From Macrostomum lignano (lineage: Eukaryota): 64,000 bases of DNA. A program made the position numbers and the translations under genes. Where the stretch lies: assembly GCA_002269645.1 (NCBI GenBank), contig NIVC01002732.1, forward strand, positions 81,522 through 145,521, written 5' to 3'. Below the pieces are notes generated by a model that saw only the letters and a program-made list of their open reading frames with translations, was not told the DNA's origin and searched no databases. Positions within the stretch are counted from its first letter, which is position 1. Every line of letters starts with the position of its first letter. Of the stretch, positions 13,139 through 64,000 are shown in pieces.

Positions 13139-13189
<51 letters not shown>

Positions 13190-14715: not shown

Positions 14716-14914
14716 CCCCAAGCAGGAAGTTTGGCGTTCTTCCGCGTGTCTGAAAAAAGGAATCGACAAAACTGGTCGGTCGAATTCTACTGGACGCGAA
14801 GGCTGCACGAGAGGGCTCGCCCAGCCCCACCGCCGCCTCCCCGGTGGGGATAAATTATAACTCTCTATTTCCCGTGTCTAGGTCGATAACACGTCACAGT
14901 TCAATTCCCTAATA

Positions 14915-44327: not shown

Positions 44328-44440
44328 TACGTTTTCAGCCAGTCAGGCGTAAGACTACGTCACAGGGCTTGGGCGCAAACGTAGGACGCACCGCCGGTAG
44401 TGTCGAGCAGGCAGTCGACGAAACACCGAGCGGTCCTTCG
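44328..44440 (-). mobile_element. Short 3' end of an RTE-like element
   Basis: Shares CGTCACAGGGC...GCAGGCAGTCGACGAAAC with 63125-63225; (TTG)n tail on the minus strand. Confidence 0.55.
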
Positions 44441-45122
44441 GATCTACTCTAATCACATGCCCGACCGCATCAGGTGTCTCACCGACTCCCAGGCGCTTCT
44501 CCGCTCCCTCCAGCGAGGCCCTGCAAAAGCGCGCTCTCCGGGCTGCTGTACGATCTGGGAACTCCTCGTCTCCATCTCGGCCTCCACGCACGTAGATCTT
44601 CAATGGGTGCCAGGACACGCTGGACTCCGCCTCAACGACCTGGCGGACGCCACCGCCAAAGCTGGATCGGCTCTTGACCAGACTCACGCAAAAATCAGCC
44701 TGGCCGCTGCTAAAGCGGCGATCGACCGATCAGCCAAGTCTACCGAGCGGACCCGCACTGCATCACTCACCGCCTAACCACCGGGGACGGCGCCAAAATC
44801 AAGAGATATCTCCCCAGACATGACGAGATCTCCCTCGCCCAACTCCGGACTGGTCACTCCCCCTTGCTCCAGCAGTACCGTCACCGCATTGGCCAAGCCG
44901 ACAGCCCCTACGTGCCCGCACTGCGGCGAAGCCGATGAGGACCTGGAGCACCTGATCAAGGTTTGCCGCTCTCACCAACAGGCCAGAGACCGGCACCTCG
45001 GCGAAAACCCGAGCCTCCAGACGCTCAGCAACATCAGCAGGCAGGTGATAGACTTCTTAAAGGAGGTCGGGGCTCAGACCCGCCCCCGGACTGACCGGTC
45101 GGAAATAACAACAACAACAACG
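44441..45122 (+). mobile_element. 3' fragment of an RNase H-containing non-LTR retrotransposon (degenerate, in-frame stop at 44775-44777)
   Basis: RNase H motifs CLTDSQALL and LQWVPGHAGLRLNDLADATAK, a CCHC knuckle CPHCGEADEDLEHLIKVC, and an (ACA)n tail. Confidence 0.85.
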
Positions 45123-45535
45123 AAACACCGAGTGCGCACCTGCTCCTCCTGCACCAATTGCGGGCAGCACGGCTCGGATGATATGGCCTGCCAAGTCGCC
45201 GACGGCGCAACAGTTCGCTGGGACGGGGCAGGGATAGAGTGCCGCATTGGTGACTCGCTCGTAGCCGATCTTAAAGGCGGCGCGCAGCAGGCCAGCGTGC
45301 GCCGCATCGACCAGCCGTTCGAGCGAATCCGTCAGCGACCAGGTCTCGGCGTTGAAGAACAGGACGGTCTCGATCACCGACAAGAACAACGCCGCCCTCG
45401 GGCGGTCAGGTAGGGCCTCGGACTGCTGGACAGCCCTCACAGAACGGAAGACAGCCCAGGCAAGTTTACGACGACGTCGTAAATCCTCGCGAACGTCAGG
45501 CACCAGACTGCCGAAGTAGACGAACTGCTGTCCAC
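45105..45535 (-). mobile_element. 5'-truncated RTE-clade non-LTR retrotransposon fragment
   Basis: QQFVYFGS...REDLRRRRKLAWAVF...IETVLFFNAETWSLT...GHIIRA, typical of the RTE post-RT region; (TTG)n tail; paralogous to 63090-63795. Confidence 0.8.
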
Positions 45536-45989
45536 ATCACTATCTTACGGTTCAGAAAGTATCTACTCTAGTTTTAATGCGTATTAAACTGTTACTTTTC
45601 GATAATTTACACTCCGATATAAGGTTCATCTCAGTATAGGTGCAGTTGGCATCATCAAATATTTAGGATATCAAAGATGAATAGAAATTAGGATAGTAGT
45701 GATATAAAGGTAGCAGCTTGGGTGAAAGTAGGGGTTTTGGGGTTCTTGGTGTGGTAGGGATTTAAGTTCGCGGGATCAGGGTCCCGAGAAATGTTCAGGA
45801 TAGGGTTCGGGGTGGAATTCTAGAACGTGATTTTCGGGAATTCACAAATTTTCTGAATTCCCCTGGAATTTTGTCCGTCAAACAAACAACTTGTAGTGAC
45901 TGGCTGCTAAATGGCTATTCAGCAGCACTCACTAGCTTTTCCTAAGAGCGCTGTGACTGTGCACGCTAGTTTTGCGTGGCAGCTGACCT

Positions 45990-46145: not shown

Positions 46146-46997
46146 AAGAGCATCTGGGAGCCGTTTTTCCCCAGACCTGCGTTCGGGAGCTTCCTCGACC
46201 GGAGCCGCCTCTCTGCCTCCGAGCTCTCCTCTCTCATTTCAGGATTTTCAGGTTTTCAGGTTCGAGCAACATCTACTAGAACGATCAACTGTCGAGACAT
46301 TTTCAGATTTGCCTTTGCTCCGAGCGACTTCGTTATTTTATTTCAGGTGACGGATAGACAACTCTGCCGACGCGTCGAGTCCGCACACCAAGGTGGAAGC
46401 AACCCTACCAAGTCTATGGCTAACGTTTTAGGTTCCTTTTTCGGCAAATCGATAGGTAGTACAACGGTACTATCTAGCTACTTCCGGAGCAGCGAGTTCA
46501 ATTTTAGGAACATCTTCAAGAACTCGGGAAGAAGCAAAACAAACTCATAATGCTAGTCAGTCCATCGGTATTTTTCAACCTGGCACTAGAGGCCTTTAGA
46601 GGCTCCGTTAAACTCATTATCGATGCTTGTTCATTTATATGGTGGTCAAACCCTGGCTCTACAGTCGAAGGGTCACCGAGTGCAATGCACAGTTTACTTC
46701 GCTAACACAAGAGTCGCGATGCAGTCTAATCGCCAATTTCCATCGCGGCGGCTAAGAGAATTCGCTTTCAACACGCGTGATTTCGGCATAGTTATCATTG
46801 CAGATCGCACCGAGATGCCCTATCCCTAAGAGTACTACGTGTATCCAGGGCTCACAAAAAGCTGAAAACTCGCGTAAAAATTGTTATGGAAATTTCCGGA
46901 GCTTCACGTGGGCCCTGGGCTTTAAATGTTTATAAATATTATGCGGGTCAACCTGCAGCACCAGAGCCCTAAGAAACTCTTGTGCAGCAACCAGCAA

Positions 46998-49900
46998 ATG
47001 GATTTGCTGCAACTGATACTCGCTGCCTTCCTAGGCAGCCTCTTGGCATTTGAAACCGGCTCTGCTGTCGCGGGTGAGTCTGATTGCTGCTGCCAACATT
47101 TCAAATGCGTCGCATCATAATGCTAGGGACTGCGAACTGCAGCCTCTGATCGAGTTTGATTTTCGACCGACTGGCTGACCGTAATGTGATGTTTTGAAGC
47201 CATTGATAACATGCGCTTGATGGTGTTATCAATAACAGGTAGGACTTGTATTTATGACTGAGTTCTTCCATGGCTGTTTGCTCTCATCCCTGATCGATGG
47301 GTTGATCCAAATATCAGTTTTAAAACGGTACTAAAATGCTCTAGTAAATGTACTACATAAATACAAATTTACAAATCCAAGAAACAAAATATTGTTTCTG
47401 CCAACAGCGTTAGACTCTTATCTCTAGACTCTCAGCAGCAGTCACTAACCCAGGTCCTAGCATGTAGAATTAGGGGTACCGGAGTAGTCAGTTACTGACC
47501 CAAATTTATTCGTGACAGATATTTGTAGTTTCCTACTTTTATAGATGTACTGGTAAGTTTTGCTGACTATTTACTTTCAATTGCTATGTCGAAAAATAGA
47601 AATTCTATGTCGAAGAACTAATTAATCGTCCTATTTGCAAATCGTGAAGCGATCATGTGCTCTTCCGGGGTTTATTTAAGGGTTTCTGAAGCTACAATTT
47701 AAAAAGTTACCTTATCAAAATGATGTATGTTTCCCACTTATCTGGATTATCTGGCGGACAATTTACGAGCGTACTTACCTGGGGAAATGCAAGGCAAAAT
47801 GGGTGATATTCGTTATAAATATTGATACAGAAAGCTACCTCAAAAGTGCGTTTTTTTTCTACAGAAACATTCCAGAGAAGCAACAATAGTTTTCATCGTT
47901 ATAGACATATTTCTTGACAAATTTCACAAATTGATCAAGGTGAAACCTCACCTTACGGCTTTCAATAAAACGCTTTTATGCAGTTATACTGTCTGTCTGT
48001 CTGTATGCGTATGCCATATTTACTTCTATCCTGTCATATGATGAAGAGCTATGTTAAAATGTTAAAGAGAATGTTAAAACGCTTTATTAATGTTATCAGT
48101 AGCTATTCGTTGGAAATATACTAATTGTGTTGCAATCGTCATAAACAGTCAGAATTCGGATCCCGAATTTCACTGCCGATAATTTAGGCTAGGGCCGGCG
48201 GTCAATTTGTAGCAGTTAAAGTGTTGGCTGACAGACAAGATGAGGCAGTCAAAATTCGTAAAACCATCAAAAGTTCTAGACTGTTTTGCAATTAAAGCAG
48301 TTCTGTGAGCACTGTTTCTCCAAGTACTGATGTGGTCCCTGATCCACAGTTTCAGTCCCGGCCGACACTGGAACAATTCAGTGTCCGGAAAACTTCGGGG
48401 AGCCCGGCGTCATCTATGAGAACTCCAAAGTCTACAACTGGACCATTCGCGGGCCGAAGGTTGTAGCCATTCGATTCCACTTTGTGGAACTGGAGACCCC
48501 ATACGACCGCTTGGAGATTTTCGAGAGTACGGACGATCTCGAAACAACGTATCTCAGGACTCCGAAATTCCGAATCGATCCTAATAACGCTACATCCCAA
48601 GTGCTTGTGCTTATTGCTCCTGTGCTAATTCGATTTAGCACAGATAGTAGCGTCGGAGAGAGGGGATTCAACCTAACCTACACGCTTGAGGAATCATTGG
48701 GTGAGTAACGTTGTTGTCAGGCTATTGTCTCACGAGTTATTCAATGATGGCTAAAAGGATAAAAATAATTGGAATTAGTATACGTGGTCGAGCTGATAGT
48801 TGACTAGCTACCCAATTTTCGCAATTTTAGTTCGATACAGAACTTTCACCGAGCCCAGCGACGACGCAATCTGCTCAGAGCTGGAAATCTCGGATCGAGA
48901 CACCAGCAGTGTTAGCATCGAATACCAGTGGCTCATTGACCGACCCGGGAGAATCGACCTCAAGCTGTCCTTCTCTGACCTCGCTCGGATCTACCAGATG
49001 ACGACAACTCCAGACAAGGAGCCCGTCTTCACCGATGGACCAAAGGAGAGAGAAGGGACGTCGCGTTTCCGACTGTTCGGTCCTGTGCTGGTGCAGATTA
49101 CGAGGAAAAAAACAAGGGGACGAGTTTTTAGGCTGTCCTACAGCAGTAGCGACGAAGGTAATTCTGGACTTAAAGTGACTTGCTAAAGTTTAGGGTGACT
49201 CTGCTTTCAGACCATTCCAATGATTATTCCATTCTCACTTCAGATCTGGAAATGCCTACTGAAATAATCAAAAATGAAGAGGGAGAGAGAATCTGTTACC
49301 AAAGTAAAGGTACCGACATCGCTGTGAGCAACGTCGCAACAAGAGCATGGTCTATCGCCGTGAATCCCCAGCAAATCGTTGAGCTCGAGCTATTTGATGC
49401 CGATGGAAGTCAGCCTCATACGGATACGATAAGCGTGTATAATGGCGTTCGTCCTCTGCTGAGCGAGTCCCCGATATTCAGTCAGACTGGACTACTTGGT
49501 GAGAGGAAGGCCGTGAGAGCGAACGGATTCGTCACTGTGGTGCTGACGACAGAAGCCAGACGATCACGACGTGGGCTCGGTCTCTCCTACACTGTGTACA
49601 GCAGTAAGAATCGTTTTGAACTATGATAATCGAAGTGCAAAGAAAAGCTTAGCATATAGTGCGATGTAGGGCATAATAGCCAAATGCGTGAGTCACATAA
49701 ATCAGGTAAAAGTGAATCAGAATATACACAGTCAATACAATGACAATTTCAACAACTTTGTTGGTGACTAAAACTCAATCAGTAATATTTCCACACTTTC
49801 ATTAAGCTTCTCAAGAGGAACCGAGTGGGCGGATAGAGTTCCCCAAGGGCTCAGCGGAGTTCAACAGCGACATAGATTACCGCTGGTTCATTAGCAGAGA

Positions 49901-52900
49901 CATTAGACTCAGCATCCGATTCACCTCCATAAGCCTCCATCCCAATGGCAAGCTGTACATCTACGAGAACACAACGTCTGAGGACGAATCGGCTCTGAGA
50001 TTCCTGGTGACGGATGCGAGCTCCAGAGAGTCGGAGTTCCGTCTGTCCGGTCCCGTCATGATTCGATTAGTTGCCAGCGGAGACGGCGAGTCGAGAGGCT
50101 TTCGGCTGTCGTACGCAGCTGACCAGTCGGCCAGTGAGTGACAATTTCCTAAAAATTTGTCTTCGCTGTCTCTTTGGTGACAAGCATAGATATGCGATTG
50201 ACGCAACTGCTTGTGTGACACTGCAGATACTGACATGGCTGTTGAGCTGATTGACGGCTATCGAGGCTCGAGATCTCTTATCCCCGAGAACGGGTCGCCT
50301 ACTGCATGGGTCATTGCAGCCAAGCCCGGGCGCTCAGTTCTGTTGAACCTGCCAGAGCTACCAGTGGTGTCAGGAATCGCAATAAGTCTCTATGAGGGAG
50401 CCGTCACCAGCTTGTCGAGTTCTGAGCTACTCCAGCGGATCCCGTATGCGAGCATCGTCAGGTACAACGGTCCTCTGACTGTGGTTTATCGACCAAGGGC
50501 TTCGAGCTTCATTAGATTTCAGCAAGAGTTCAAGTTTCAGTTAGCAAACGGTAATGAATGTTAGCATTTTTACGTATTGATGCAGTCATTGTCTTCTATA
50601 AGTAGTAATTTGCAATGTTGTTTAATGAAATTCTCAAAATGCGTTCAGATTTTAGTCGAATTTTATTTCACTGGCAAGCAGCTAAGAGCAACGTTGTTTT
50701 TCTTTCTTTTTTTTCAGCTCAAGAGCCTCTCATAAAAGATTCGGGGTCAATTCGATGTCCTCAGGTGTCTGGTGAGACCTACGAGAGCGAAATGGAGTAC
50801 AGATGGACAGTCAACCGGCTTAACTTAGTTGTTATCGAGGTCACAACCGTGGACATTGGGAGTGGCGTCATCGAGCTGTACGAGGAGACCTACCTGACCG
50901 ACGAGCCACAGCAGGCCAAGCTGAAGTTCGTTCTGACTCAGTCGAATGCTACAGCACGGGGGGCCTACCGACTGCCGGGTCCAGTCATGGTCCGGTTCGT
51001 CACGGGCAAAGATTTTGTTGGTCAGGGATTCAATCTGTCCTACACTACTGAAGAGCGGACTTGTAAGTCAGAATATTCATTTCATTGAGTTGCATCTTTA
51101 GGGTCATATTGAATTGTCGATTCTTATCTCAGCATGTTCATTTCATTGAGTTGTGACTTTAGGGTCTTATCGAATTGCCGATTCTTATCTCAGCAAGTCC
51201 ATTTCATTGAGTTGTGACTTTAGGGTCTTATCGAATTGCCGATTCTTATCTCAGCATGTTCATTTCATTGAGTTGTGACTTTAGGGTCTTATCGAATTTC
51301 CGATTCTTATCTCAGCATGTTCATTTCATTGAATTGTGACTAGGGTCTTATCGAATTTCCGATTCTTATCTCAGCAAGTTCATTTCATTGAGTTGTGACT
51401 TTGAGGTCTTATCGAATTGTCGATTCTTATCTCAGCAAGTTCATTTCATTGAGTTGTGACTTTGAGGTCTTATCAAATTGCCGATTCTTATCTCAGCAAG
51501 TTCATTTCATTGAGTTGTGACTTTAGGGTCTTATCTTTAGGGTCTTATCTTTAGGGTCTTATCTTTAGGGTCTTATCTTGATATCCACCAGAAAACTGGT
51601 GGATATCAAGAATTCCAATTCTTTTGAATTCTCTTTAAGCTACTAACTGAGAGATGATTATAGCTAGCATAAAACTTACTGTGTAGAAATACTCTCATTT
51701 ACGTTTTGCAGTACACCGAATGTTGAATTATGACTCCGGCAATATTTTCTGCCCCGAGACCGCACTGGTGAACTATGAGAAGTCCATGGACTACCGATGG
51801 ACAATCAATCGAAAAAGCATCATCGTCATTCGGTTCGACTTTATTGACATTCAAGACACCATCGAGTTCTATGAGAAGGTCGATGAGAGTGGAGAGCCAG
51901 ATCGGCAGAGATGGAAGCTCAATGTGACTCAGGAGGCTGCAGAAGCGTCGAATATTACGCTGGTTGGACCAGTGCTCATCCGGTTCAGAACGAACTCTCA
52001 AGTTACTGCTCCCGGCTTTCAGCTCTACTATCAGGCTGGCAGAAAAATCTGTAAGCATCCAATTCGCAATGTTTCCGTGAAATTTGTTAGCACATATTGC
52101 CTAAAAGCTTTCAGTCTTTCTGGGAATATTTTGTCTGCACATACTAAACAACCGCTTTTTACTCGTTATTATATTTTCCTTAAATCCTTCCAGTGGACAG
52201 TGGAAACCTTTCATATCCGGAGAACTATGGATACTCTAAGTACGATAACAACGTTGACTACGAGTGGAGCATCAATGAGCAGAAACCGGTGGTGCTTACG
52301 TTCATTCGCTATGATACTGAGAGAATTTATGATTGGATCGGCTTGTACGAAAACTCACCGGTGCATGAGAAGCCTGACGAAAATAAACTAAAGTACAGGC
52401 TTACAGGGAGCGGATACGGTGAAACATACACCTTGAAGGGACCAGTGCTCATCAGGTTCAAAACTGACGGCAGTACCAATCGTGACGGGTTTCGCATGAC
52501 ATACTATCTAGAAGAAACCTCAAGTAAGAAATAATTAGTATAGTAATTTTCTATCAAAGTTTGATTATAATTTGATTTTAATTAGAATTTAGGAGTTCAT
52601 GATAGATTTCTGCATTGTCTTACCTGGTTCGTAAAAATTAAAAATTTATGTATTCACGGCAAACAGTAGTTCATTATTTTTATATTCATGAAAGCTGCTT
52701 CATAAGACGAGTTAAAAATTTGAATTCGAACTTTCAGGTCTGTCAGGCGACTCGGGTGAAGTTCGGTGGGTGAACCCGCCATCATTCACCAAAGCCCAGG
52801 TAAACTACATTTGGAAAATCGACCGAAAGGCAGCTGTGGCAGTCAAATTCAGTGGGGTGGAAATCTCAGACTGCTGCGACAAAATCCAGTTATGGAGAAA

Positions 52901-55900
52901 GGACTCGTCAACTGCAAACATTACACTGACGAAGGGGAATGCTACTTCATCTACATACAGACTGATCGGACCTGGTATGATCAAGTTAGTTACAGCTGGT
53001 CGGCCAATGCAAAGAGCTCTAAACTTTTCCTATGAAATAGGAGACCAATTCGGTATGCTGATGTCACTTTGATGTTTTTGATCCCATCTTCGCGTCTTTG
53101 GTATTTTCTATTGTCTGAAAATAATGCACGGTTTCTATAATATTTTAGTAATATCCAGTGTTCTGACACAGACTCAAGGTGAAATTGGAGTGCAGTCAAG
53201 CAACTTGAGGAATGCCATTGGGCTGGATGTCTGCGATACTGATGGCTACGACATGCAGATTGACCGCAGGTGGGTTGTCGACACAACAGCGGCGGTCAGC
53301 ATTCGATTCGTGCAGGCTCAATTGCTAAGCGGTTGCGACAAGCTAGAGCTGCACGAGAGGACGAAGATCCCAACTCCAAGGAGTCGCGTGTTCTCCCTGA
53401 CTGATGCACCGCTCAGCGATTTGATGTCTACCGAGTTCAAACTAAGAGGCCCAGCAGTTGTTCGGCTTCAATCGCGAAGGATGAGGCCGACGATAGTGCC
53501 GTTCGGGGCGACGTTCAGTGTCAACCGACAAAGTGAGGCAGTCTGAAAGCGACAATCAATTTGTATCTCTAGATAGGAACAGTGACTTTTCTAAATAACT
53601 TCCCCGCAGATTTATCGATGACGACTGCGCTTTTGCGAAACTTGAACGGACTGCAGGGCTGCCTCATGCCCGATGGTCGAAGCAGCTGCGGACCGAGTTC
53701 CGCAAGAGCCTGGTCCATCGCTGTGAGCCCTCAACAGACTGTGGAGCTGCAGCTCTTTGATGCCGAAGGAGGCCAGCCGCATGGCGATACAGTCAGTGTG
53801 TACACGGGAGTTGAGCCCAGGCTCAGCGAGTCTCCCATTTTCAGTCAGACTGGCCTACTTGGCGAGAGGAAGACCCTGAGAGCGAGCGGATTCGTCACCG
53901 TAGTGCTGAGAACCGACGACGCCAATGAAGCAAAGCGAGGGTTCGGCCTCAAGTATTCAGTGGAAAACGGTAATTACACATACTTTGTTTTCATTTTTTA
54001 ACAATAACTAATGTAAAAATATAGTCATACTACTTTAGTCTGCAAGATCTATTCTTCTTTGCACTTAAAGTTTTACTGTCGGGACGATCCGGAGAAATCA
54101 GGTTCCCTCAAAACTCGTCGGCGGATAGTTCAGCTTTCGACTTGGACATGGATTACAGCTGGATCATTCAAAGCAGCGGTTCTGTTCGCATCAATGTTCG
54201 TTCCCTCAATCTCCAGAACGGAGACAAGCTTCATCTGTACGAAAACACCACGTCCAAGGATGAGCTCAAGAGAAGATTTGTGCTAACAGATGCGAGTGCC
54301 AGCGAGTCGGAGTTCTGGCTGAGAGGATCTGTTTTGATTCGCATCACGGCAGCGGGAGACGGCAGCCCGAGAAGCTTCCGGCTGGCATATCAGTCAGATC
54401 CCGATTTGAAGTGTAAGCCTTTAGAGAAGTCGCGTGCATATTAAAACTAAAACTACATGTACGTAATCGTGAACCATTTTTATCCCAATCAAACCTTGCA
54501 GTGGAAAATGCGGTTGAAGTAGTGAAGAGCAGTCGAGGTACCAGATGGAGCTTCCCTAAATTTGATACCACCGACAGGAGTGAAAGAGCAAAAATTGTTT
54601 GGGTCATTGCGCCAAAGCCGAGTCATGAATTCACCGTTCATATTCTTTTCAAAGTAGAAGGATTTTTTGAATTTTTTCCCGGTTCGTATACCTGCGGTTG
54701 GTTCGTTTATGCTGGAAATTGGCTTACTCAGAGACTCTCCAATGATAGCTTTGAGGCTCAGTTCAAAGGACTGACACAGCACGTCAGTCAAAGTGGACCT
54801 GTTTCCGTTTACTGGGAACAGATACAAGAGTCTCATATTGCTTCCCGCTGTACTGATTTGGTCTTTCAATTCGATTATCAAATCAGAAACGGTGAGCTCT
54901 TGCCCTTTTCAGTGCACAGTGAGACCATGGTGAGACCATAAGCCTTACTTCCTTTCAGTGCATCGCTACCTTAGCGAGGACTCTGGAAGCCTTCGCTGTC
55001 CAGAGGAATCCAGCTCGACTTACGCTAACGAGATGGAGTACAGATGGACCATCAACAGAAGGAATTTCGTCCTCATCACTGTCACATCTGCTGACATTGG
55101 CTACGGAAATGACATCATCCAGTTGTACGAGATGACTGATGGAGAAACCGATGAGCCAGAAGAGAGCAAGCTGAGGTTCACACTGACGCAGGCGAATGCG
55201 ACATCGGCAACGTATAAGTTGATTGGTCCCGTGCTGATCCGGTTTAGCACGGATGAGTCTCTTGTTGGCCAAGGCTTCAATTTGTCTTATGCTGTTGAGG
55301 AACGAACTTGTGAGCCATTTTGGTGTTTTATGCATTTACTTGGTTTAAAATTTTGAGTTCATGGTGTAAAATTTAGTAGCTCTGCGTATTCCGACGCTCG
55401 GTTTTTATGCACGTGAGTGTTTCTCCACCAAGCCACTTCTTTTAAATTTTTAGTTTCCCGTAATCTGCTGAACGATTCGGGCAGCATCAGGTGTCCGAAT
55501 GAAGAGTATGAAGCCTACGAGCATCAGATGGACTATCGTTGGTACATCCCATCGAGCAGAGTTGTCTTTTTGACAGTTAGAAGCATGGGCATTCAGGACG
55601 CAAACGATGTGGTTGAATTCTATGAAAAGACTGACTCTTCGGCGGAACCGCAGACTGAGAACAGAAAATACACACTGACTGGAGACAGCTGGAGCTCAAG
55701 AAAGTATGTTTTGATTGGACCTGCGTTGATCCAGTTTAAAACTGATCGTCAGAACGCGTCAAGAGGCTTTATAATCGATTATTATCTCGATCGATACGTG
55801 GGTGAGTTTCGAATTCCTGAGTTCCAGATACTCTCATTACTGTTTATAGTAATTGGTAATGTTAATTATTATTATTTAAGTTAAATTTTAGCATGCAAGG

Positions 55901-58900
55901 TGGGTCTAAATTTGAGCCAATGCAAAGCATCTGATGTCTATTCAATTTTCGATGCCTTTTCAGTCGACTCAGGAAAGCTTCAATGCCCAGAGAACTTCGG
56001 CAGTGGCAACTATTTAAACAGCAAAACGTACGCCTGGTGGATCGGCGATCTGAGCCTGCTCGAGATTAAGGTTGACTCGTATGACGTTGAAGCGGGAATC
56101 GATAAAATCAGTTTCTATGAGAAGACTCAGCTTTCTGAAGATGCTCAGGATTCTGAGAAAGTGTTTACTGTGACAAGAAATAACAAAACAGCCCAGGTCG
56201 TTGGTCCGGTGCTGATCCAATTCGTTACTGACTACAGTGTCACCAAGGCGGGCTTCAACTTATCTTACTCGGCTCTTGACAGCAGAAGTAAGTTGTTGTT
56301 AATTAAGTCAGTCAGTAAACATTTACAGAGAGTGACAAAACAAAGCAAAACAAAACAAACAGAAAGTGAAGTTACTGTTTCCGTCAACCTACTAATTTAC
56401 ATCTTTAATATTCGTATCATTCCTCAGTACGCTCTGAATGAAACCGTTTTAGTAAAATCGAGAAACCTGACAGACGAAAAAGCCGATGTTGTCTGCTCTG
56501 AAGGCGAGCAGCTTCCTGCGGAAGAAGAGATGAAGTATGACCTCGAGACTGACTACAGGTGGCTCATTGATCGTCAAGGCTGGGTCTCGCTGAAGCTGTC
56601 TCACGCAGATATTGTCAGACTGTACGAGATGACTGCTGACCCCAGCGAGGACAGGCTGGCCTTCGTCTCTGAGCACAGGTCAATGACGAACGCGACCTCT
56701 GTAGAGTTCAGGCTGAGAGGTCCCGTGCTGGTTCGAGTCACCACAAAGCGGGTCAGTGGCAACATCTTCAAGCTGTCGTATCAGAGCGGGAGCGAAGGTA
56801 AAATATGATCATTTTCCATCTATTCATCATTTAAAGGAAATATTATAAATAAGCTTTTGAGTCCCAGATAAATGATTGTTCAACTGCTCAAACACGTTTA
56901 ATAAGTATAAACACGCCTTCATTACAGAGCATTCAATGTGTACAGACGCTTGATATGCTTAAGGTCGGTTTGCCATGGACAACTGAAGTGAACGGCACAC
57001 TCGATTCTTTTAGAAATGAGGTGCACGCTTGTAAAGATAGAATATTTTCCGAATCGCTAGAGAGTGCACGGCTCTGAAGGGGGCTTTGCTATAGAATGAT
57101 TCGGTCGAAAAAACCCTGCGATAGAAAATCCGACTTCTCGAGAGCAAAAGCACTAGCGATGCGACAATTATACTCGTACTATATGTTCCTTACCTTCAGC
57201 TCATTTCTGGGAAAATCGATTTAGCGTCTTTCTACTGTACTTCAATTTTCAATGCGGTTCGCACTGCCGTTGGTGACTCAGTGGCTCCATTATTGGTCAA
57301 ATCAATGAAAAATTATTTCTAAACTAATTCACTCCAGTTTATGGGATATATCAACCGCGGAAATGACAACGACAGTTCGGACCGTGTTTATGTTCAGCAA
57401 TAGCATGTAGGGCGGATAGACGAAACTGGGCGGGCAGTCACCACAGATTATACGACAGCGGGTAATAATATACCTTTTTACGTTCTATTTGATAAAAACT
57501 GCAACCAATTTGGCCACGGCTCAGCCTGACCATAGACATAGAATTTTCCATAGACAGCCACCGCTGGCGGCAGCCAATTTGGTGAAAACTGCGAGCTATT
57601 TTTCCAGCTTGAAGATAGCAGCTGCTCTGATGGCGAATCGTGGGCCGTACCAAAAGATAAGTCAGCTGGATCGAGAGCGAATCGTGAGAGCGTACAGGAG
57701 TGGCGACGACTGGAGAGAGCTTGGCAGAATGATGGGGATGAAGAAACCGACAGTGAGGAACATCGTGACCACGTATGAACGAACTGGTAGAGTTGGCAGA
57801 TACTGGACTGGCTGCTGCAGCAGGTGCGACACTGCATCAGCACAGGATGCGCATTCTGAAGAGAGAAGTGCAGCAAGCACTGAACTGCATCACGCCTCTC
57901 AAGTGCCTGCGCTGGATCAACCATTCCCAGACGTACTTCAATCGGTGCTTGAATGCTGAGGACATAATGTTCTGACTTCGTGCATGTATTGTTAACATTC
58001 TTTATCGTTATTGTTATGCTATTGAGCTGCTATCTTCAAGCTGGCAAAATAGCTCGCAGTTTTTACCAAATTGGTTGCCGCTAGCGGTGGCTGTCTATGG
58101 AAAATTGCTGCGGCTGCGTCAGGCTGAGCCGTGGCCAAATTGGTTGCAGTTTTTATCAAATAGAACGTAAAAAGGTATATATAGTGTCTTCGATAGGAAA
58201 CGATGATTAATTGCCGAGTTCAGTGTAACAAACTTAACCAGCGAACACATTCTTACACCTTTTCACGTTCAATTTTGATCAAAGTCCAGTTGGGCCCAGT
58301 CTAACCCCAGTTCAAAACATTCTAACCGAAGTAAGGTTTAGCCATAGACAAAATTATCCTCAGTCTGAATTGAATTTCCGCTAGTTTTTTTAGAACTGGA
58401 CTTTGATCAAAATTGAACGTGAAAAGGTGTAGTATCGCCAGCACTCTTGCCTTTCACTGTTTGCTAATGGCCGGATAATAGCTGGACTCATATTTACCCT
58501 CGCATTATCCCAGAACTACCGATGCCGACTGAACTCATCAAAAACATTGAGGGAAGCAAAGCAATTTATCCGTCCAGAGGACCATTGGGCTCATCGAGAG
58601 CCTGGTCCATCGCTGTGAACCCTCAACAGACGGTTGAGTTGCAGCTCTTTGATGCCGAGGGAGGCCAGCCCCATGACGATACAGTCAATGTGTACACGGG
58701 AGTTGAGCCCAGGCTCAGCGAGTCTCCCATATTCAGTCAGACTGGCCTACTTGGCGAGAGGAAGACCCTGAGAGCGAGCGGATTCGTCACCGTGGTGTTG
58801 AGAACTGGAGCCAGCGGAGACAAACTCGGCTTGAGGTTCACCTACTCCGTTGGGAATGGTGAGTTGAGTCCGAAGTCTGCTGCGTCTTTGTCATCTAAGT

Positions 58901-61900
58901 AGTTCCACCCTTTCCTCTTATTGCATCTTATAGTTCAAAGCAGGCCGCTTTGACCTCTAGATTTGACCTCCTAAACGCCTGCCACAAATTTCAGTTTCTC
59001 TGAGTGATGCCGAAGGAGAAATCAGTTACTCCTCGCAAAGTGAAGCAACTGTTGGCAACCTGGACCATCGATGGATCATCGACAGAAGCGGCACGGTTCG
59101 CATCAGGTTCAGCTCCATCAATCTTCCTGCTGGGGACAAAGTGTACCTGTACCAAAACACGAGGTCTGAGACGGAGGACAATCTGAAATTTGTGGTTTCC
59201 GATTCGAGTGCCAGCCAGTCAGAGTTCCGACTGTCCGGTCCCGTGCTGCTTCGGTTCACAGCCAACAGCGACGGCAGCCGCAGGGACTTCAAGCTCACTT
59301 ACACAGCTGATGGTTCGGCTGAAGGTAATTCCTTGTTTTGCTGAAGATTCAGAAAACTTCCTACTCAGAGATCACCTTTTTAAGTTAACACCTTAGCCAT
59401 TTCTTACATCCAAGTACGCCCTCATTCAAGGATTATGAGCTTTATATTATTTTTTTATTAGAGGCAGGGGGGTTGTGAGCACCCTGGAGCACTTTAAGCG
59501 ACATAGGCACACAACCGGCGAGAGGCATTACTGCCCATTCCGCCGACTCCCCTGAGCAGGCATACAAGCGCGCGGATACGTACGCAGGCACACATTCAAA
59601 CATGAGTGTACAGCGGCCCTAACTTATTTTATCGTTAGGCATGTACACTTCACTGCGCCTTGGGGGGTTGGCTCTCAAGGGCGTTAATTGCACGAGCAGA
59701 GCCAAGCCGAGATTCCAATTCAGCCCCAAATTAATGTGACTGCACTTGGAATCGAGCCTGGGTCGCTGGCACACTAGAGCCTGCGCTGGACCGCTGGGCT
59801 ACGCCCCCCCAGGATTATGAGCTTACCATTATTGTGACTGCATCGCCAAGAAAAATCTGGCCAGAACCTCCGTCTCAGTCATTTGATTCCAAAGACCACC
59901 AAATCATGAGCACTGAAACACAACTGAATCTTTCAGAGGCTTCACCAGCAACCGAGGTGATCAGGGGCAGCAGAGGCATGAGACTCTGCAATCCGGCGGA
60001 AGGATCTACCGTCCTCCCGAGACCTTCGAGCACAAAGTGGATTGTTGCACCAACTGGTTCTCATGATTTCCTGACGCACGTCATCTTTAACCGTATCACG
60101 ACTTCATCTTCTGTAGAGATATTCGCTGGCGACATGGATCTGCTAAGCAGCCCAGCGATGCTGAGAAGCGCGAGACGGATCCCATTTGCGAATCACGTGA
60201 CGCACAAAGGCATCCTTGCAGTTGTATATTCGTCCAACAACTCTGCTTCGGCGAGCGGTCAAGTTGTTTTCGATTATCAGATCAGAAGTGGTGAGAATTA
60301 TTTAGTTGCACATTGTATTGCGATAATATTAATCTGCTGATTGGCACTAAGTTCCTACTTTGCACAATGTGGGCAATGTGGTGCTTAAAATTTATTCACA
60401 TTTTCAGTGCACGTTGCCATGACCAATGACTCTGGTAGCTTTAGTTGTCCCGAAGAGACTGGCTCGACTTACGCTAACGAGATGGAGTACAGATGGACCA
60501 TCAACAGAAGGAATTTCGTCCTCATCACTGTCACATCTGCTGACATTGGCTACGGAAATGACATCATCCAGTTGTACGAGATGACTGATGGAGAAACCGA
60601 TGAGCCAGAAGAGAGCAAGCTGAGGTTCACACTGACGCAGGCGAACGCGACATCGGCAACGTATAAGTTGATTGGTCCCGTGCTGATCCGGTTTAGCACG
60701 GATAAACGGCTAGTCGGTCAGGGCTTCGACTTGTCCTATTCCATCGAGCCTAGGACTGGTAATTGCACTTTTTACACTTCCTCTGACTTTTTCCAATCAT
60801 CTCTGATCCCCGCTACTTTCAAACAGTTTCAGTTATCGCCAATCAGTCCCAAAGTTTTGCAATGATTCAGTGCCCAAACGATACCAACAGTACAATGGAG
60901 AAGTGGATGGAGTATAAGTGGCTGATTCCGGGCAAATATGTTTACAAGCTGGCTTTCAACCGGTCGAATCTCGGAGCAGATGGAAGCTTTATTGAAGTAT
61001 TTGCAATTTCTGATCAAGAAAGCGCCGATGCCGATGAGCAAAACTTGCTGTTCATTCTAACTGACGCGAATGCCACGTCAGCGGACTTTGTCCTGACGGG
61101 ACCCCTGCTGATTAGAGTTAAAACTGGCAGACGCTTTGATGGTCGGGCATTGCGTTCTCTTACAGACGCGGACCGGTTGTAGGTGAGCTTGAGGTGTTGA
61201 ATTTTTTACGATTGCATTCACCACTGAGAGGATTAAATATGTACTTCGCTTGATTTCATTCGACTGCAGCTCTAATCTAAATATACTAAATCCACCTATA
61301 CTAAAAATGGTTTTTCGGTAGGTATGTGTGTGCGTTTGTGTGTGATCGTTTTACTCAAACTTGCTAATTGAGTGCGAGAGTAACACGAGAGTACTTTTGT
61401 CTGAGCAAAGACCACTAGGAACATTTCGTCTAGTAGTCCTCGTCTCTGAGTAGAAGTGTAAGCTACTTTAAGAGTAAAAGGGTAGTCGTAGGTGTATAAG
61501 GTAATTAATAGTGTAGAATTTAATTTGATCAGTTTCGTTATTAGTAGTCGCAACTTTACGATGTACACAATGGCTTTAGAATGTAAATCGGGTGCAAATT
61601 GACCGCATTTCTTTCAGTTTCGGAGGACTTGGGCACGATCAAGTGTCCAAGCAACTATGGATCGTCGATGTACGCTAATAGCAAAGACTACCAATGGCTG
61701 ATCGACACGACGGCCCCGCCCCGTCAACATCCGGATGGAAGAAGTGGACATTGAGAACTGCTGTGACAAAATCTTCATATACGACAGATTCAGCATCTCT
61801 GATGAGGTAGACGATAGCAAGCTGACAACGAGTCTGGTTAACAACAATGCCACCGGAGTTTCACTAAGCCTGCAAGGTCCTGTGCTGGTTCGATTCAAAA

Positions 61901-62082
61901 CTGACTCAAGCGTTACTTCGAGAGGATTCCGCCTGATTTATTCTACACAAAGTCTGGACGGTGAGTTTTCTAAACTTTTGAGCAAATCAAATCGCTATTG
62001 AGGCACTAGTCAGTCACTTATATGATAAATAACTCTCGTACATTGTTCCTTTTCAGTCGGAAATACCACCAACCGGATATGA
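46998..62082 (+). CDS. Large predicted secreted multi-CUB-like protein (~2,680 aa, cubilin-like architecture): signal exon 46998-47073; 23 domain exons 48350-48700, 48831-49157, 49244-49603, 49816-50133, 50227-50550, 50718-51062, 51712-52050, 52194-52523, 52738-53052, 53149-53532, 53610-53969, 54071-54412, 54502-54891, 54959-55309, 55454-55801, 55964-56287, 56453-56797, 58514-58858, 58995-59324, 59937-60290, 60408-60758, 60827-61182, 61618-61960; terminal exon 62057-62082
   Basis: Signal peptide MDLLQLILAAFLGSLLAFETGSAVA. Each exon is AG/GT-bounded and phase 1-1; 21 of 23 have lengths divisible by 3. Recurrent CUB pattern DSGxIxCP..Y.N..YxWxI...D.I.xYE...GPVLIRFxTDxS...GFxLxY. No EGF or transmembrane exon found. 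Some acceptors could shift by one or two codons. Confidence 0.85.
48350..52050 (+). CDS. CUB-like cassette 1 (7 exons, types a-b-c-d-e-f-g)
   Basis: See the gene-level feature; exon types assigned by sequence similarity across cassettes. Confidence 0.8.
51075..51578. repeat. 61-bp intronic minisatellite (about 7 copies) followed by (TTAGGGTCTTATCT)x4
   Basis: TTCATTG recurs at 51081, 51142, 51203... Confidence 0.9.
52194..55801 (+). CDS. CUB-like cassette 2 (8 exons: a, extra, b-like, c, d, e, f, g)
   Basis: 53610 exon resembles 49244; 54071 resembles 49816; 54959 resembles 50718. Confidence 0.8.
55964..61960 (+). CDS. CUB-like cassette 3 (a-g) plus a final a-type exon; the last two exons are frameshifted as assembled
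   Basis: 56453 resembles 48831; 58514 resembles 53610; 58995 resembles 49816; 60408 resembles 54959. Confidence 0.75.
57471..58177 (+). mobile_element. Internally deleted IS630/Tc1-mariner-like DNA transposon
   Basis: ~155-bp TIRs starting TACCTTTTTACGTTC, TA TSDs (57469-70, 58178-79), N-terminal HTH remnant MANRGPYQKISQLDRERIVRAYRSGDDWRELGRMMGMKKPTVRNIVTTYERTGRV, and C-terminal remnant QALNCITPLKCLRWINHSQTYFNRCLNAEDI. The DDE core is absent. Confidence 0.85.
58256..58429. mobile_element. Tc1/mariner-type MITE (174 bp)
   Basis: Perfect 36-bp TIR CACCTTTTCACGTTCAATTTTGATCAAAGTCCAGTT with TA TSDs. Confidence 0.9.
59443..59810 (-). mobile_element. Full-length tRNA-derived SINE, family 2
   Basis: Minus strand GGGGGGGCGTAGCCCAGCGG (A box)...GGCTCGATTCC (B box), A-rich tail, and a 14-bp TSD AGGATTATGAGCTT (59429-59442, 59811-59824). 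Confidence 0.85.
61291..61433 (+). mobile_element. Possible short non-autonomous Helitron
   Basis: A|TC...CTAG|T ends and a TATACTAAAAATG + GT-rich 5' part shared with 39865-39985; subterminal hairpin is not convincing. Confidence 0.3.
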
Positions 62083-63089
62083 TCGGACACTTGCCTAATG
62101 CATAAAGCATGATTGATCAAAGATTGGTAAACACCGATCAGATGCAAATTAGCTAATCCAAAGAAAGACAAACTGAAGTGCTTTAGCGGACACTAAACGT
62201 TATCCGATATTCTAATCGTTTTCTTCATTAAGATATCATCTGCAGTTGATAATTTGTCCCACTTTGAGCAAATAACTCAACAATTATTTACTTTCACCTG
62301 TTGCTAGATTTTGCACGTGGGATTAAACGATTATTAGACGTGTGAAAGGATAAAAGATTATAATCTATAGGCATTATCTCATCATATTTTTGGATAATCA
62401 CCATGTCGCGTTTTTTCACATGCGAAGCAAGAACTTTAAATGATAATCAAAAGACTACTACGATTTGATGATTCTATATTGTATTATCATTTGAGCTGGC
62501 GATCCGTTTTTTTCTAATTTTACACAACTCCCTATTGACTCAAGCAATATTTTATATAGTTTACACGTTTACTTTGGCACTAAGCTGTGCTGTCCTGAAA
62601 CTAATAGTTTCCTGTTGGTACGCATCGACAATAGAAATGCTCTCTTCGACCATTTTCAATATAGAAATATAGCTAGCTATGACTAAAATTCTAAAGCAGT
62701 CCTTGAAAAACCGAATATGCATCTAACTGAGGGTTCACTTTATGCCTTGGAAAACTTTCTTCAACTTAAAAATCTATTTTAAGTCATTAACATCGGCCTT
62801 CTGATGGCTAATTAGTCAGTTTGCCGGGGCCTCTGGGTGGAAGTCAGCAAGTCAGCGAGGACACAAGCAGTCAGGCTCATTCCGCTGACCCTGGGTACTG
62901 TGATGCGAGAGTCGTACGCGTTAACTACCGCTGATCCAGTCCCGGCTTCTTTGATAGCGTTTCACTCTTAGAGTGTGCACGTTTTGGACTAACTTTTCAG
63001 TTTAAATATCCTATGTTTCGCCCAGATTATCTGGGTATACTTTAAATTTAATGAAAGCTACCTGTATTGCTAAAATATATATTAGTGGG

Positions 63090-63795
63090 AAGCAACAACA
63101 ACAACAACAACAGAATACGCCGTTCAGCGTCACAGGGCGCGTCAAGGCCATTGCGAATGAACGCCACGCCGCCGGCCGAATTCTCGGGCGCCGGCGTCAG
63201 CCAGCAGGCAGTCGACGAAACGCCGAGTGCGGGCCTGCCCCCGCCGGTTAGGGTGTCTGCAGCGATAGCAGCACCACCTCCTGCACCGGTTGCGGGCAGT
63301 ACGACGCGGCGTGAATGATGTGGCCTGCCAGCTGGAGTCGCCGACGGCGCAACAGGTCGCTTGGACAGACCAGGCCGGCGCGGCGATACAAAGTCGCGTT
63401 GGTCACTCGCTCGTAGACGATCTTGAAGGCGGCGCGCAGCAGGCCACCGTGCGCCGCGTCAACTTGTTGCTCGAGCGACTCCGTCAGCGTCCAGGTCTCG
63501 GCGTTGTACAGCAGGACGGTCTCGATCAGCGCCTGGAACAACGCCGCCCTCTTGGCGGTCAGGTAAGGCCTCTGACTGCAGGACTGCCCTCACAGAACGA
63601 AAGGCAGCCCAGGCAAGCCCGCAGCGACGCCGCAAATCCTCGCGGACGCGGGAACCAGACCGCCGAGGTAGACGAGCTGCTGACAACGCGGAAGCTCTGT
63701 CGCCTGTCCATCAGCGCCTCGGCACGAAATCGCAGCCTCGATGTCGTCCGGCACGCAGAGCACGACGGTCTTCTGAGTGTTGACCACCAGTTGAT
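63090..63795 (-). mobile_element. 5'-truncated, frameshifted RTE-clade non-LTR retrotransposon
   Basis: VNTQKTVVL...QQLVYLGG / REDLRRRCGLAWAAF / FQALIETVLLYNAETWTLT...LQLAGHII; (TTG)n tail at 63092-63112. Confidence 0.85.
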
Positions 63796-64000
63796 GTGTT
63801 CCTTACTACCAAGAATTCTAAGTAATCAAGGAACAATCACTTCTAGCTACTGCTAGGCAACCCAGTAATCAAATGAAGGTATCTCTTACTTGAGTTCTGA
63901 TCAGTAAATCTCTTCGCGTGCGTAGTTCTCTGTCTCAATCCGTTCAGACGTCTTGATCTAGTTGTTCTGATCCAGGTTCCATTTTAATTTCAACGAAGTT

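What the first reader, a model, noticed from the sequence alone, without database searches (positions are those of the whole stretch)
46998..62082. Giant secreted protein built only of 23 atypical CUB-like domains, one exon per domain
A signal peptide is followed by 23 symmetric phase-1 exons of 315-390 bp and a 9-codon terminal exon. No EGF, protease, transmembrane or GPI segment is visible. Cubilin (27 CUBs) is the established comparator but has an N-terminal coiled coil and EGF repeats and disulfide-bonded CUBs, none of which is seen here. This is the best candidate in the window for an undescribed lineage-specific extracellular system, such as a mucus, adhesive, egg-coat, gamete-recognition or multivalent ligand-capture protein. 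Function is inference only.
Basis: partly seen in the sequence, partly recalled or inferred. Interest (0 to 1): 0.8.

Follow-up and report, generated by a model that had tools for sequence, protein, structure and literature searches.

The report
Flatworm giant secreted all-CUB protein gene
This is a real, transcribed gene of the flatworm Macrostomum lignano that encodes a secreted protein of about 300 kDa made only of 23 cysteine-poor CUB domains; it already sits in public databases as an unstudied "CUB domain-containing protein", so it is a curious but not startling orphan.

Summary
Window 46998-62082 (+) carries a signal-peptide exon, 23 domain-sized phase-1 exons with GT-AG introns, and a short terminal exon.

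- **Source:** the window is the last 64 kb of GenBank contig NIVC01002732.1 (M. lignano assembly Mlig_3_7).
- **Existing models:** two other loci of that assembly carry RNA-seq-derived 2,689-aa models of the same gene (PAA92424.1, PAA83892.1; UniProt A0A1I8JLF6). They end at the equivalent stop, with no EGF, transmembrane or protease part. It is therefore not a cubilin orthologue, but it is also not unpredicted.
- **Damage in this copy:** exon 22 lacks 1 nt and exon 23 has 4 extra nt, which gives a stop at codon 2547. Both sites lie 2.3-2.9 kb from the contig end and are probably consensus errors.
- **Domains:** there are five types in the order D, (E-A-B-C-D-D-D-D), (E-A-B-C-D-D-D), (E-A-B-C-D-D-D). 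All are CUB by Pfam, profile comparison or predicted fold. None has the canonical four cysteines.
- **Calcium sites:** domains 1, 8, 16 and 23 keep the Tyr-Glu-Asp-Asp calcium site.
- **Relatives:** I found no orthologue outside M. lignano and no functional literature.

My best guess, which is inference only, is a glycosylated extracellular rod that binds partner lysines or arginines through calcium at regularly spaced domains.

The parts
46998..47073 (+). Exon 0: start codon and 25-residue signal peptide, phase-1 donor
   Evidence: Published models begin with the same MDLLQL....
48356..48700 (+). Exon 1 = domain 1, type D. Pfam CUB 26.4 bits. Full Tyr-Glu-Asp-Asp calcium site. A tandem alternative acceptor lies at 48350.
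48831..49157 (+). Exon 2 = domain 2, type E
49244..49603 (+). Exon 3 = domain 3, type A
49807..50133 (+). Exon 4 = domain 4, type B
50227..50550 (+). Exon 5 = domain 5, type C. This is the domain modelled with AlphaFold2.
50718..51062 (+). Exon 6 = domain 6, type D
51712..52050 (+). Exon 7 = domain 7, type D
52194..52523 (+). Exon 8 = domain 8, type D. Pfam CUB 28.4 bits. Full calcium site, including the stabilising Tyr.
52738..53052 (+). Exon 9 = domain 9, type D (degenerate; has a vicinal Cys-Cys)
53149..53532 (+). Exon 10 = domain 10, type E
53610..53969 (+). Exon 11 = domain 11, type A
54071..54412 (+). Exon 12 = domain 12, type B
54502..54891 (+). Exon 13 = domain 13, type C. The GenBank model for this contig (PAA55601.1) breaks off inside this exon at 54856.
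54959..55309 (+). Exon 14 = domain 14, type D
55454..55801 (+). Exon 15 = domain 15, type D
55964..56287 (+). Exon 16 = domain 16, type D. Tyr-Glu-Asp-Asp site present.
56474..56797 (+). Exon 17 = domain 17, type E
58514..58858 (+). Exon 18 = domain 18, type A
58995..59324 (+). Exon 19 = domain 19, type B
59937..60290 (+). Exon 20 = domain 20, type C
60408..60758 (+). Exon 21 = domain 21, type D. 91% nt identity to exon 14, in the exon only.
60833..61182 (+). Exon 22 = domain 22, type D. 350 nt here against 351 nt at the other loci. A 1-nt deletion in the G run at 61145-61147 leads to an in-frame TAG at 61180-61182.
61618..61960 (+). Exon 23 = domain 23, type D. Tyr-Glu-Asp-Asp site present. 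4 extra nt within 61712-61723 (GGCCCCGCCCCG against GGGCCCCG at the other loci).
62057..62082 (+). Terminal exon: completes a Val codon, then GNTTNRI and TGA. Hydrophilic, so no GPI-type tail.
51068..51535 (.). Tandem repeat of about 61 nt inside intron 6. Not coding.
57468..58180 (.). Tc1/mariner-like remnant inside intron 17. It has 93%-identical inverted ends (57468-57623 and 58025-58180) and a Sleeping-Beauty-type HTH reading frame. The matching intron has the same length in locus L002 and is about 1 kb shorter in L003.

Best explanation
**What it is (shown).** This is one of at least three near-identical loci of a Macrostomum lignano gene (transcript clusters Mlig033186, Mlig028314, Mlig029297). 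It encodes a signal peptide followed by 23 contiguous CUB domains and nothing else.
- The corrected product is 2,668 aa. The mature chain is about 297 kDa, pI 5.2, with 35 N-glycosylation sequons and only 0.87% cysteine.
- Each domain is one phase-1 exon.
- The array was built by an old triplication of a seven-to-eight-domain block. The order is D1, then (E-A-B-C-D-D-D-D), (E-A-B-C-D-D-D), (E-A-B-C-D-D-D).
- All five domain types are CUB folds that have lost the two canonical disulfides.

**How it most likely works (inferred).** The protein is secreted and N-glycosylated, and forms a stiff beads-on-a-string rod with very short linkers.
- Domains 1, 8, 16 and 23, that is one per block plus the first, keep the Tyr/Glu/Asp/Asp calcium site.
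- In PCPE-1, cubilin, C1r/C1s, MASPs and neuropilins this site clamps a lysine or arginine of the ligand.
- The protein would therefore act as a multivalent, calcium-dependent binder or cross-linker of extracellular partner proteins. The other 19 domains would serve as spacers or secondary contact surfaces.

**The two frameshifts in this contig's copy** are most likely consensus errors near the end of a PacBio/Canu contig.
For: **Identity**
- The window equals NIVC01002732.1, with 0 mismatches over 27 kb.
- Exon peptides are 98-100% identical to M. lignano models.
- Full-length models PAA92424.1, PAA83892.1 and A0A1I8JLF6 are 94-98% identical over 2,665 aligned residues.
- Those GenBank models come from a genome-guided RNA-seq assembly, so the gene is transcribed and the transcript stops where the window model stops.

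**CUB nature**
- Pfam CUB scores 67 and 80 bits on the two halves, and 8 of 23 domains hit on their own.
- Profile comparison against type D gives 99.6% for type B, 98.6% for type E and 64% for type A.
- AlphaFold2 models were built only from each type's own three copies. Type C gave pLDDT 75 and type A 78.
- Both models hit neuropilin, Neto2, PCPE-1, MASP, C1r, TSG-6 and spermadhesin CUB domains, with query TM-scores mostly about 0.55-0.69.
- One Trp is invariant across all 23 domains, and the alignment is in register throughout.

**Selection**
- Rate ratio 0.42-0.44 between loci, with no stop in exons 0-21 of any copy.
- Rate ratio 0.13-0.36 between internal duplicates, with synonymous divergence above 1 for most pairs and no intron similarity.

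**Calcium site**
- The invariant E46, D50 and D96 of domains 1, 8, 16 and 23 align with Glu183, Asp191 and Asp233 of PCPE-1 CUB2, and Y20 aligns with its coordinating Tyr.
- The residue roles are taken from PMC6372009.

**Secretion**
- The signal peptide is the only hydrophobic segment.
- An N-x-S/T sequon is conserved at the same column in most D-type domains.

**Frameshifts as errors**
- They are unique to this contig and lie in G and C runs 2.3-2.9 kb from the contig end.
- The assembly is PacBio CLR + Canu + Pilon in a neopolyploid genome.
Against: - I found no expression site, proteomic detection or phenotype. The gene identifiers appear in no searchable paper text or in the supplements I could read.
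- Calcium binding is inferred from four aligned residues only. 19 of 23 domains lack a complete site.
- A between-locus rate ratio of about 0.43 is fairly relaxed.
- The 4-nt insertion in exon 23 is not a simple homopolymer slip, so real decay of this copy cannot be dismissed.
- Profile comparison alone does not link type C to CUB (0.3%). That link rests on a medium-confidence model and on context.
Confidence: 0.6

Rival explanations
1. This particular copy is a freshly disabled paralogue. On this reading the two indels are real, the transcript carries a premature stop at codon 2547 upstream of two more introns, and only the sister loci make the full protein.
For: - Both indels are absent from loci L002 and L003 and from every published model.
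- The exon-23 change is a complex +4 nt event rather than a one-base slip.
- M. lignano is a neopolyploid with redundant copies (and the abstracts listed), so loss of one copy would be tolerated.
- GenBank annotates only a truncated 1,515-aa model on this contig.
Against: - The other 2,427 codons are fully open and 99-100% identical to L002 in many exons.
- Both defects cluster in the last 3 kb of a long-read contig.
- The net length change of the two indels is +3 nt.
Confidence: 0.25
2. It is a structural secretion, such as an egg-shell, cement, rhabdite, mucus or other matrix component, whose CUB domains mainly self-associate rather than capture specific ligands.
For: - It is very large, repetitive, glycosylated, secreted and lineage-specific.
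- CUB proteins recur in invertebrate adhesive and pedal-disc secretomes (titles and abstracts listed).
Against: - It has no Ser/Thr/Pro-rich mucin region, no cysteine-rich polymerisation modules and almost no free linkers.
- The recurrent cysteine column is occupied by Phe, Leu, Tyr, Trp, Ile or, in one domain, Ser in the other domains, so it is probably a buried position and not a cross-link site.
- The proven M. lignano adhesives are other proteins.
Confidence: 0.2
3. It is a fast-evolving reproductive protein, a seminal-fluid or gamete- or egg-coat-binding factor, functionally akin to the single-CUB spermadhesins.
For: - The between-locus rate ratio of about 0.43 is high for a structural gene.
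- No orthologue is detectable outside the species.
- Spermadhesins are among the fold matches.
Against: - No expression data exist.
- It was not found in the supplements of the reproduction-related gene study that I could search.
- The fold matches are generic CUB matches.
Confidence: 0.1
4. It is the flatworm cubilin, an endocytic multi-ligand receptor.
For: - Cubilin CUB5-8 (3KQ4) is the best solved-structure sequence match to the D-type profile (E 3.4e-7).
- Both have a long CUB array with calcium sites.
Against: - It has no N-terminal amnionless-binding region and no EGF repeats.
- It has 23 CUBs, not 27, and no canonical disulfides.
- The similarity is at domain level only.
Confidence: 0.03

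Closest known systems
Cubilin (27 CUB domains; structure 3KQ4)
   Same: Both have a long uninterrupted array of CUB domains and calcium-site CUBs used for ligand capture. Cubilin is the best sequence match among solved structures for the D-type profile.
   Different: Cubilin has an N-terminal amnionless-binding stretch, 8 EGF repeats and disulfide-bonded CUBs. This protein has none of these, has 23 domains, and has five diverged sub-types in a threefold super-repeat.
PCPE-1 CUB1-CUB2, representing the calcium-binding CUB subset (also C1r/C1s, MASPs, neuropilins, TSG-6)
   Same: Domains 1, 8, 16 and 23 align residue for residue with the Glu, Asp, Asp and Tyr calcium ligands of PCPE-1 CUB2. Domains 1 and 8 also keep the stabilising Tyr next to the first Asp.
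   Different: PCPE-1 has two CUBs plus an NTR domain, and it has disulfides. Here only 4 of 23 domains keep the site, and no ligand is known.
M. lignano PAA76314.1 (BOX15_Mlig014562g1, 759 aa)
   Same: It is the nearest protein that is not a copy of the gene itself. It has a B-like plus C-like CUB pair in the same order, 28% identical (E 8e-11).
   Different: It has only two CUBs. They retain some cysteines and are followed by a non-CUB region and a C-terminal membrane span. Its second CUB matches Pfam CUB_M02D8_5_3rd.
Spermadhesins (single-CUB seminal plasma proteins)
   Same: They are secreted proteins made only of CUB, and they are among the fold matches for types A and C.
   Different: They have one domain of about 110 residues with two disulfides, and they are restricted to mammals.

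Membership tests
CUB domain superfamily (Pfam PF00431) | Profile match above the curated cut-off (21.4 bits) | tested here: met
   67.1 and 80.2 bits for the two halves. Of the four type-D domains scored individually, domain 1 (26.4 bits) and domain 8 (28.4 bits) pass alone; domains 14 and 16 do not. 8 of 23 domains hit at E <= 0.1 on their own.
CUB domain superfamily (Pfam PF00431) | Beta-sandwich (jelly-roll) fold of about 110 residues | tested here: met
   AlphaFold2 models of the two most divergent types (C: pLDDT 74.8; A: 77.9) match solved CUB domains at Foldseek probability 1.0, with query TM-scores mostly about 0.55-0.69. Types B and E are linked by profile comparison at 99.6% and 98.6%.
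CUB domain superfamily (Pfam PF00431) | Four conserved cysteines forming two disulfides | tested here: not met
   Each domain has 0-3 cysteines, and none is at a canonical position. The C2 position is Tyr or Arg ('YRW', 'RAW'), and C3 and C4 are absent. This is typical of the family but not obligatory for it, because C1r, C1s and MASP CUB1 lack one disulfide (my own knowledge).
Calcium-binding CUB subset | Tyr + Glu + Asp + Asp calcium-coordinating residues | tested here: inconclusive
   All four residues are present in domains 1, 8, 16 and 23, by alignment to PCPE-1 CUB2 and cubilin CUB8. The set is partial in domains 11, 14, 15 and 21 and absent elsewhere. Actual calcium binding cannot be tested with these tools.
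Cubilin | N-terminal amnionless-binding region followed by 8 EGF repeats | tested here: not met
   The signal peptide is spliced directly to CUB domain 1 in the window and in all published models. There is no EGF hit in Pfam.
Cubilin | 27 CUB domains and orthology across animals | tested here: not met
   There are 23 domains. The search of 1.84 billion representatives, run with a four-domain E-A-B-C block, gave no orthologue-level hit outside M. lignano.
M02D8.5-like multi-CUB membrane proteins (Pfam PF23062, PF23064) | Match to the family-specific CUB profiles, and a membrane span | tested here: not met
   There is only a sub-threshold hit for domain 8 (11.9 bits against a cut-off of 32) and no membrane span.
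[quoted passage not shown] | Lys/Arg-rich repeats, von Willebrand D, C8, TIL, EGF, thrombospondin and lectin domains | tested here: not met
   The domain lists come from PMC6410801. None of these domains is present here.

The most novel reading that the evidence does not exclude
This could be a Macrostomum-specific extracellular system in which a 23-module rod of disulfide-free CUBs uses four evenly spaced calcium sites (domains 1, 8, 16 and 23) as a molecular ruler. It would cross-link or array a partner protein in a secretion such as egg shell, seminal fluid, gut lumen or epidermal coat. That would be a use of CUB arrays with no described counterpart.
Probability: 0.12. Interest if true: 0.6.

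Novelty: new member of a known kind. Interest (0 to 1): 0.3.

Why it matters
If the inferred mechanism holds, this would be the first CUB-only giant secreted protein with a defined role. It would also be a natural example of CUB domains that fold without any disulfide, which is useful for understanding what the CUB fold really needs and for engineering calcium-dependent binding modules.

For M. lignano biology it is a tractable candidate, because transgenesis, RNAi and in situ hybridisation are routine in this animal. It could explain a lineage-specific secretion.

More practically, the GenBank annotation on contig NIVC01002732.1 covers only the first 13 of 23 domains. The contig also carries two probable consensus errors that break the reading frame.

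Tried and rejected
- **Literature.** Searches for 'Macrostomum lignano' with 'CUB domain', for the gene identifiers Mlig033186, Mlig028314 and Mlig029297, and for flatworm, planarian or cubilin CUB proteins found nothing on this gene. The 'CUB' hits in Macrostomum papers checked in one of them were Current Biology DOIs ('j.cub').\n- **Supplements.** The supplements of four M. lignano expression or genome papers held no entry for the gene. Long tables are truncated in the library, so this is weak negative evidence.\n- **Adhesive hypothesis.** Mlig-ap1 and Mlig-ap2 have no CUB domains.\n- **Domain-profile search.** A word-indexed search with the profile of all 23 domains returned nothing at E <= 0.001. 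I used the equivalent block of UniProt A0A1I8JJS4 instead.\n- **Type C.** Profile comparison of type C against type D was negative. The question was settled by structure prediction instead.\n- **Alternative splice sites.** I looked for sites that would rescue exons 22 and 23. Only a weak donor at 61141 exists for exon 22, and nothing rescues exon 23.\n- **Other flatworms.** The protein libraries seem to hold no transcriptome-derived proteins of other Macrostomum species, because not even M. lignano RNA-seq contigs turned up. Absence of congeneric orthologues is therefore untested.
Full report
**1. What is in the sequence.**

On the + strand, an ATG at 46998 opens a typical signal peptide (MDLLQLILAAFLGSLLAFETGSAVA). 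It ends at a phase-1 donor, CGG|GTGAGT, at 47073.

Twenty-three domain-sized open stretches follow. Each is bounded by a pyrimidine-rich AG acceptor and a GTRAG donor, and all are in phase 1. A last exon, 62057-62082, supplies (V)GNTTNRI and the stop codon.

- Exons 1-21 are 315-390 nt, and every one is a multiple of three.
- Introns are mostly 67-214 nt.
- The longer introns are 1,282, 649, 1,716, 612 and 435 nt.

**2. Where it comes from and what is already on record.**

A word-indexed protein search returned only four hits, all Macrostomum lignano 'CUB domain-containing protein' entries. The window's exon peptides are 98-100% identical to them.

A cluster look-up showed full-length entries:
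- UniProt A0A1I8JLF6, 2,681 aa;
- GenBank PAA92424.1 and PAA83892.1, 2,689 aa, named 'hypothetical protein BOX15_Mlig033186g2' and 'g1'.

Fetching the locus of PAA55601.1 showed where the window sits. It is exactly the last 64,000 nt of contig NIVC01002732.1 of assembly Mlig_3_7. 27,027 nt were compared with 0 mismatches.

On this contig GenBank annotates only a partial 1,515-aa model. That model leaves the gene inside exon 13, so exons 14-24 are unannotated here.

The GenBank models derive from a genome-guided RNA-seq assembly made with StringTie and TACO (PMC5730564). The gene is therefore transcribed. The transcripts of the sister loci end at the equivalent stop, with no further exons.

**3. 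The two defects in this copy.**

With consensus splice sites, exon 22 is 350 nt and exon 23 is 343 nt. Both sister loci (L002 on NIVC01000397.1, L003 on NIVC01000052.1) have 351 and 348 nt.

- The window reads GGTCGGGCATT where they read GGTCGGGGCATT.
- The window reads ACGACGGCCCCGCCCCGTC where they read ACGACGGGCCCCGTC.

Taken literally, the reading frame stops at codon 2547. After repairing both sites the product is 2,668 aa. It aligns end to end with A0A1I8JLF6 at 94.4% identity and with PAA83892.1 at 97.6%.

Both sites lie in G or C runs 2.3-2.9 kb from the contig end. The assembly is PacBio CLR + Canu + Pilon, from a genome full of near-identical duplicates. I therefore rate consensus error as more likely than real decay, at roughly 70:25, but the sequence alone cannot settle it.

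**4. Domain analysis.**

Pairwise identities sort the 23 domains into five types.

| Type | Domains |
|---|---|
| D | 1, 6-9, 14-16, 21-23 |
| E | 2, 10, 17 |
| A | 3, 11, 18 |
| B | 4, 12, 19 |
| C | 5, 13, 20 |

The order is D, then (E-A-B-C-D-D-D-D), (E-A-B-C-D-D-D), (E-A-B-C-D-D-D).

The triplication is old.
- DNA similarity between repeat copies is confined to exons.
- Synonymous divergence between most copies is saturated, and the non-synonymous to synonymous rate ratio is 0.13-0.36.

Evidence that all five types are CUB:
- Pfam CUB is significant for the whole protein (67 and 80 bits) and for 8 of 23 single domains at E <= 0.1.
- Against the D profile, type B scores 99.6%, type E 98.6%, type A 64% (E 6e-5, full-length register) and type C 0.3%.
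- For the two doubtful types I predicted structures from their own three copies only, to avoid bias. Type C gave pLDDT 74.8 and pTM 0.72. Type A gave pLDDT 77.9 and pTM 0.73.
- Both models are all-beta. Their top Foldseek matches in the PDB are CUB domains of neuropilin-2, enteropeptidase, Neto2, PCPE-1, MASPs, C1r, TSG-6 and the spermadhesins, with query TM-scores mostly about 0.55-0.69.
- A 23-way alignment has one invariant Trp and a nearly invariant Gly and Tyr in register.

So every exon encodes a CUB-type jelly roll.

**5. How these domains differ from textbook CUBs.**

None of the 23 has the four canonical cysteines.
- The position of the second cysteine is Tyr or Arg ('YRW', 'RAW').
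- The third and fourth are absent.

The whole mature chain has 23 cysteines, or 0.87%. Fourteen domains carry a single Cys at one column ('CPE'). In eight of the other nine domains that column holds Phe, Leu, Tyr, Trp or Ile, and in domain 13 it holds Ser. I read this as a buried core position rather than a cross-linking thiol. That reading is inference.

**6. Calcium sites.**

A profile of domains 1, 8, 16 and 23 finds PCPE-1 CUB2 as its best solved relative (E 5e-8).

- In that alignment the invariant E46, D50 and D96 fall on the Glu of 'FDLE', the Asp of 'RYD' and the Asp of 'VSD'.
- By counting, these are Glu183, Asp191 and Asp233 of PCPE-1.
- Y20 falls on the coordinating Tyr.

PMC6372009 reports that Glu183 and Asp233 coordinate calcium and form salt bridges to a procollagen lysine. 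It also reports that three conserved acidic residues plus a Tyr define the calcium-binding CUB subset, and that Tyr190 stabilises the bound lysine. That the third acidic ligand in CUB2 is Asp191 is my inference from the alignment and from general knowledge of the subset, not a statement of that paper.

- Domains 1 and 8 also keep that stabilising Tyr ('PYD', 'IYD').
- Domains 16 and 23 do not, and neither do cubilin or TSG-6.
- The other 19 domains lack at least one ligand.

The complete sites sit at positions 1, 8, 16 and 23. That is one per super-repeat plus the first domain.

**7. Other properties.**

- The only hydrophobic segment is the signal peptide, and the C-terminus is hydrophilic. 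There is no membrane span or GPI-type tail.
- There are 35 N-x-S/T sequons. One recurs at the same column in most D domains ('NATS'), which fits passage through the secretory pathway.
- Linkers are 0-10 residues, and there is no low-complexity or Ser/Thr/Pro-rich region.

**8. Distribution.**

I ran a full HMMER scan of 1.84 billion representative proteins with an E-A-B-C block.
- It gave 22 hits at E <= 0.001.
- The two strong hits are copies of the gene itself.
- The next (E 8e-11) is another M. lignano protein, PAA76314.1, a 759-aa membrane protein with a B-like plus C-like CUB pair.
- The rest are weak generic CUB matches, several of them bacterial.

No orthologue is therefore visible in the flatworm proteomes held in UniProt. 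Other Macrostomum species seem not to be represented in the library, so the depth of the lineage restriction is unknown.

**9. Copies and selection.**

- The three loci share all exons in the same order.
- Synonymous divergence is 0.022 (window against L002) and 0.064 (window against L003). The rate ratio is 0.42-0.44, and there is no stop in 2,425 shared codons.
- Intron 17 has the same length in L002 (1,722 against 1,716 nt), consistent with a shared Tc1-like insertion, and is about 1 kb shorter in L003.
- L002 has a 10.3-kb insertion in intron 18.
- Identity between the window and L002 is mosaic, at 100% in some exons and 87-97% in others. This suggests gene conversion or collapsed assembly.

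**10. Interpretation.**

Shown:
- a transcribed, selected gene for a secreted, CUB-only, disulfide-free array of 23 domains;
- it is restricted, as far as can be seen, to M. lignano;
- it is not cubilin and not the known adhesives.

Inferred:
- N-glycosylated rod;
- calcium-dependent capture of basic side chains at four spaced domains;
- a multivalent binder or cross-linker in some secretion or extracellular coat.

I found no data on tissue, partners or phenotype.

**11. Verdict.**

Its exclusion of cubilin is right. Its claim that the gene is undescribed is only half right: the gene is predicted but unstudied.

It is a new member of the multi-CUB extracellular protein kind with some unusual traits. 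It is worth an in situ and RNAi experiment, but it is not a surprise to a specialist.

Noticed in passing
window 1-64000: The window is the terminal 64 kb of GenBank contig NIVC01002732.1 (M. lignano DV1, assembly Mlig_3_7). Window position 64000 is the contig end.
   Followed up: yes
window 46974-54856: The deposited annotation (BOX15_Mlig028314g1, PAA55601.1) covers only domains 1-13. It ends with a divergent '...QESPLY' tail inside exon 13. Ten further CUB exons on the contig are unannotated.
   Followed up: yes
window about 36500-38579 (+): This is the 3' part of an upstream gene whose 937-aa product has a weak Death-domain hit, as shown in the called-gene table of locus L001.
   Followed up: no
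window 14882-15874 (+): A 331-codon open frame has an F-box domain (Pfam 22.9 bits, cut-off 20.5). It may be a single-exon F-box gene.
   Followed up: partly
window 1100-1800, 2790-3480, 5200-5800, 6400-6760, 9960-10470, 12600-13270, 20800-21760, 22000-23260, 23800-24930, 25360-26180, 31460-33300, 34000-34800, 35730-36430: More than a dozen long minisatellite or tandem arrays are open in several frames on both strands and have strong GC skew (-0.5 to +0.6 per 2 kb). This is typical of the repeat-rich M. lignano genome.
   Followed up: no
window 44385-45536 and 63051-63853: These are fragments of non-LTR retrotransposons: an RNase H hit at 44385-44774, and reverse-transcriptase-like C-terminal frames on the - strand. 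They flank the CUB gene on both sides.
   Followed up: partly
window 57468-58180 (intron 17): An internally deleted Tc1/mariner-type element has 93%-identical inverted ends and a Sleeping-Beauty-like HTH frame. The matching intron has the same length in sister locus L002 and is about 1 kb shorter in L003.
   Followed up: partly
window 51068-51535 (intron 6): About 7-8 copies of a 61-nt tandem repeat, roughly 91% identical to each other.
   Followed up: partly
L002 21895-32226: Sister locus L002 has a 10.3-kb insertion in the intron that is 136 nt long in the window (intron 18).
   Followed up: no
window exons against L002 exons: The identity pattern is mosaic. Exons 3, 4, 15-17 and 19 are 100% identical, while exon 13 is 87% and exons 8, 11, 12 and 14 are about 97%. 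This suggests gene conversion between copies or chimeric consensus in the assembly.
   Followed up: partly
window 48347-48355: Tandem CAG acceptors lie 6 nt apart in front of exon 1. GenBank models use the upstream one ('AVAVSVPADT') and UniProt models use the downstream one ('AVAVPADT').
   Followed up: partly
window 23741-27761 (+): Several open stretches have coiled-coil-like, Glu/Arg-rich sequence (for example 27051-27761) between the tandem arrays. They may be exons of another gene.
   Followed up: no
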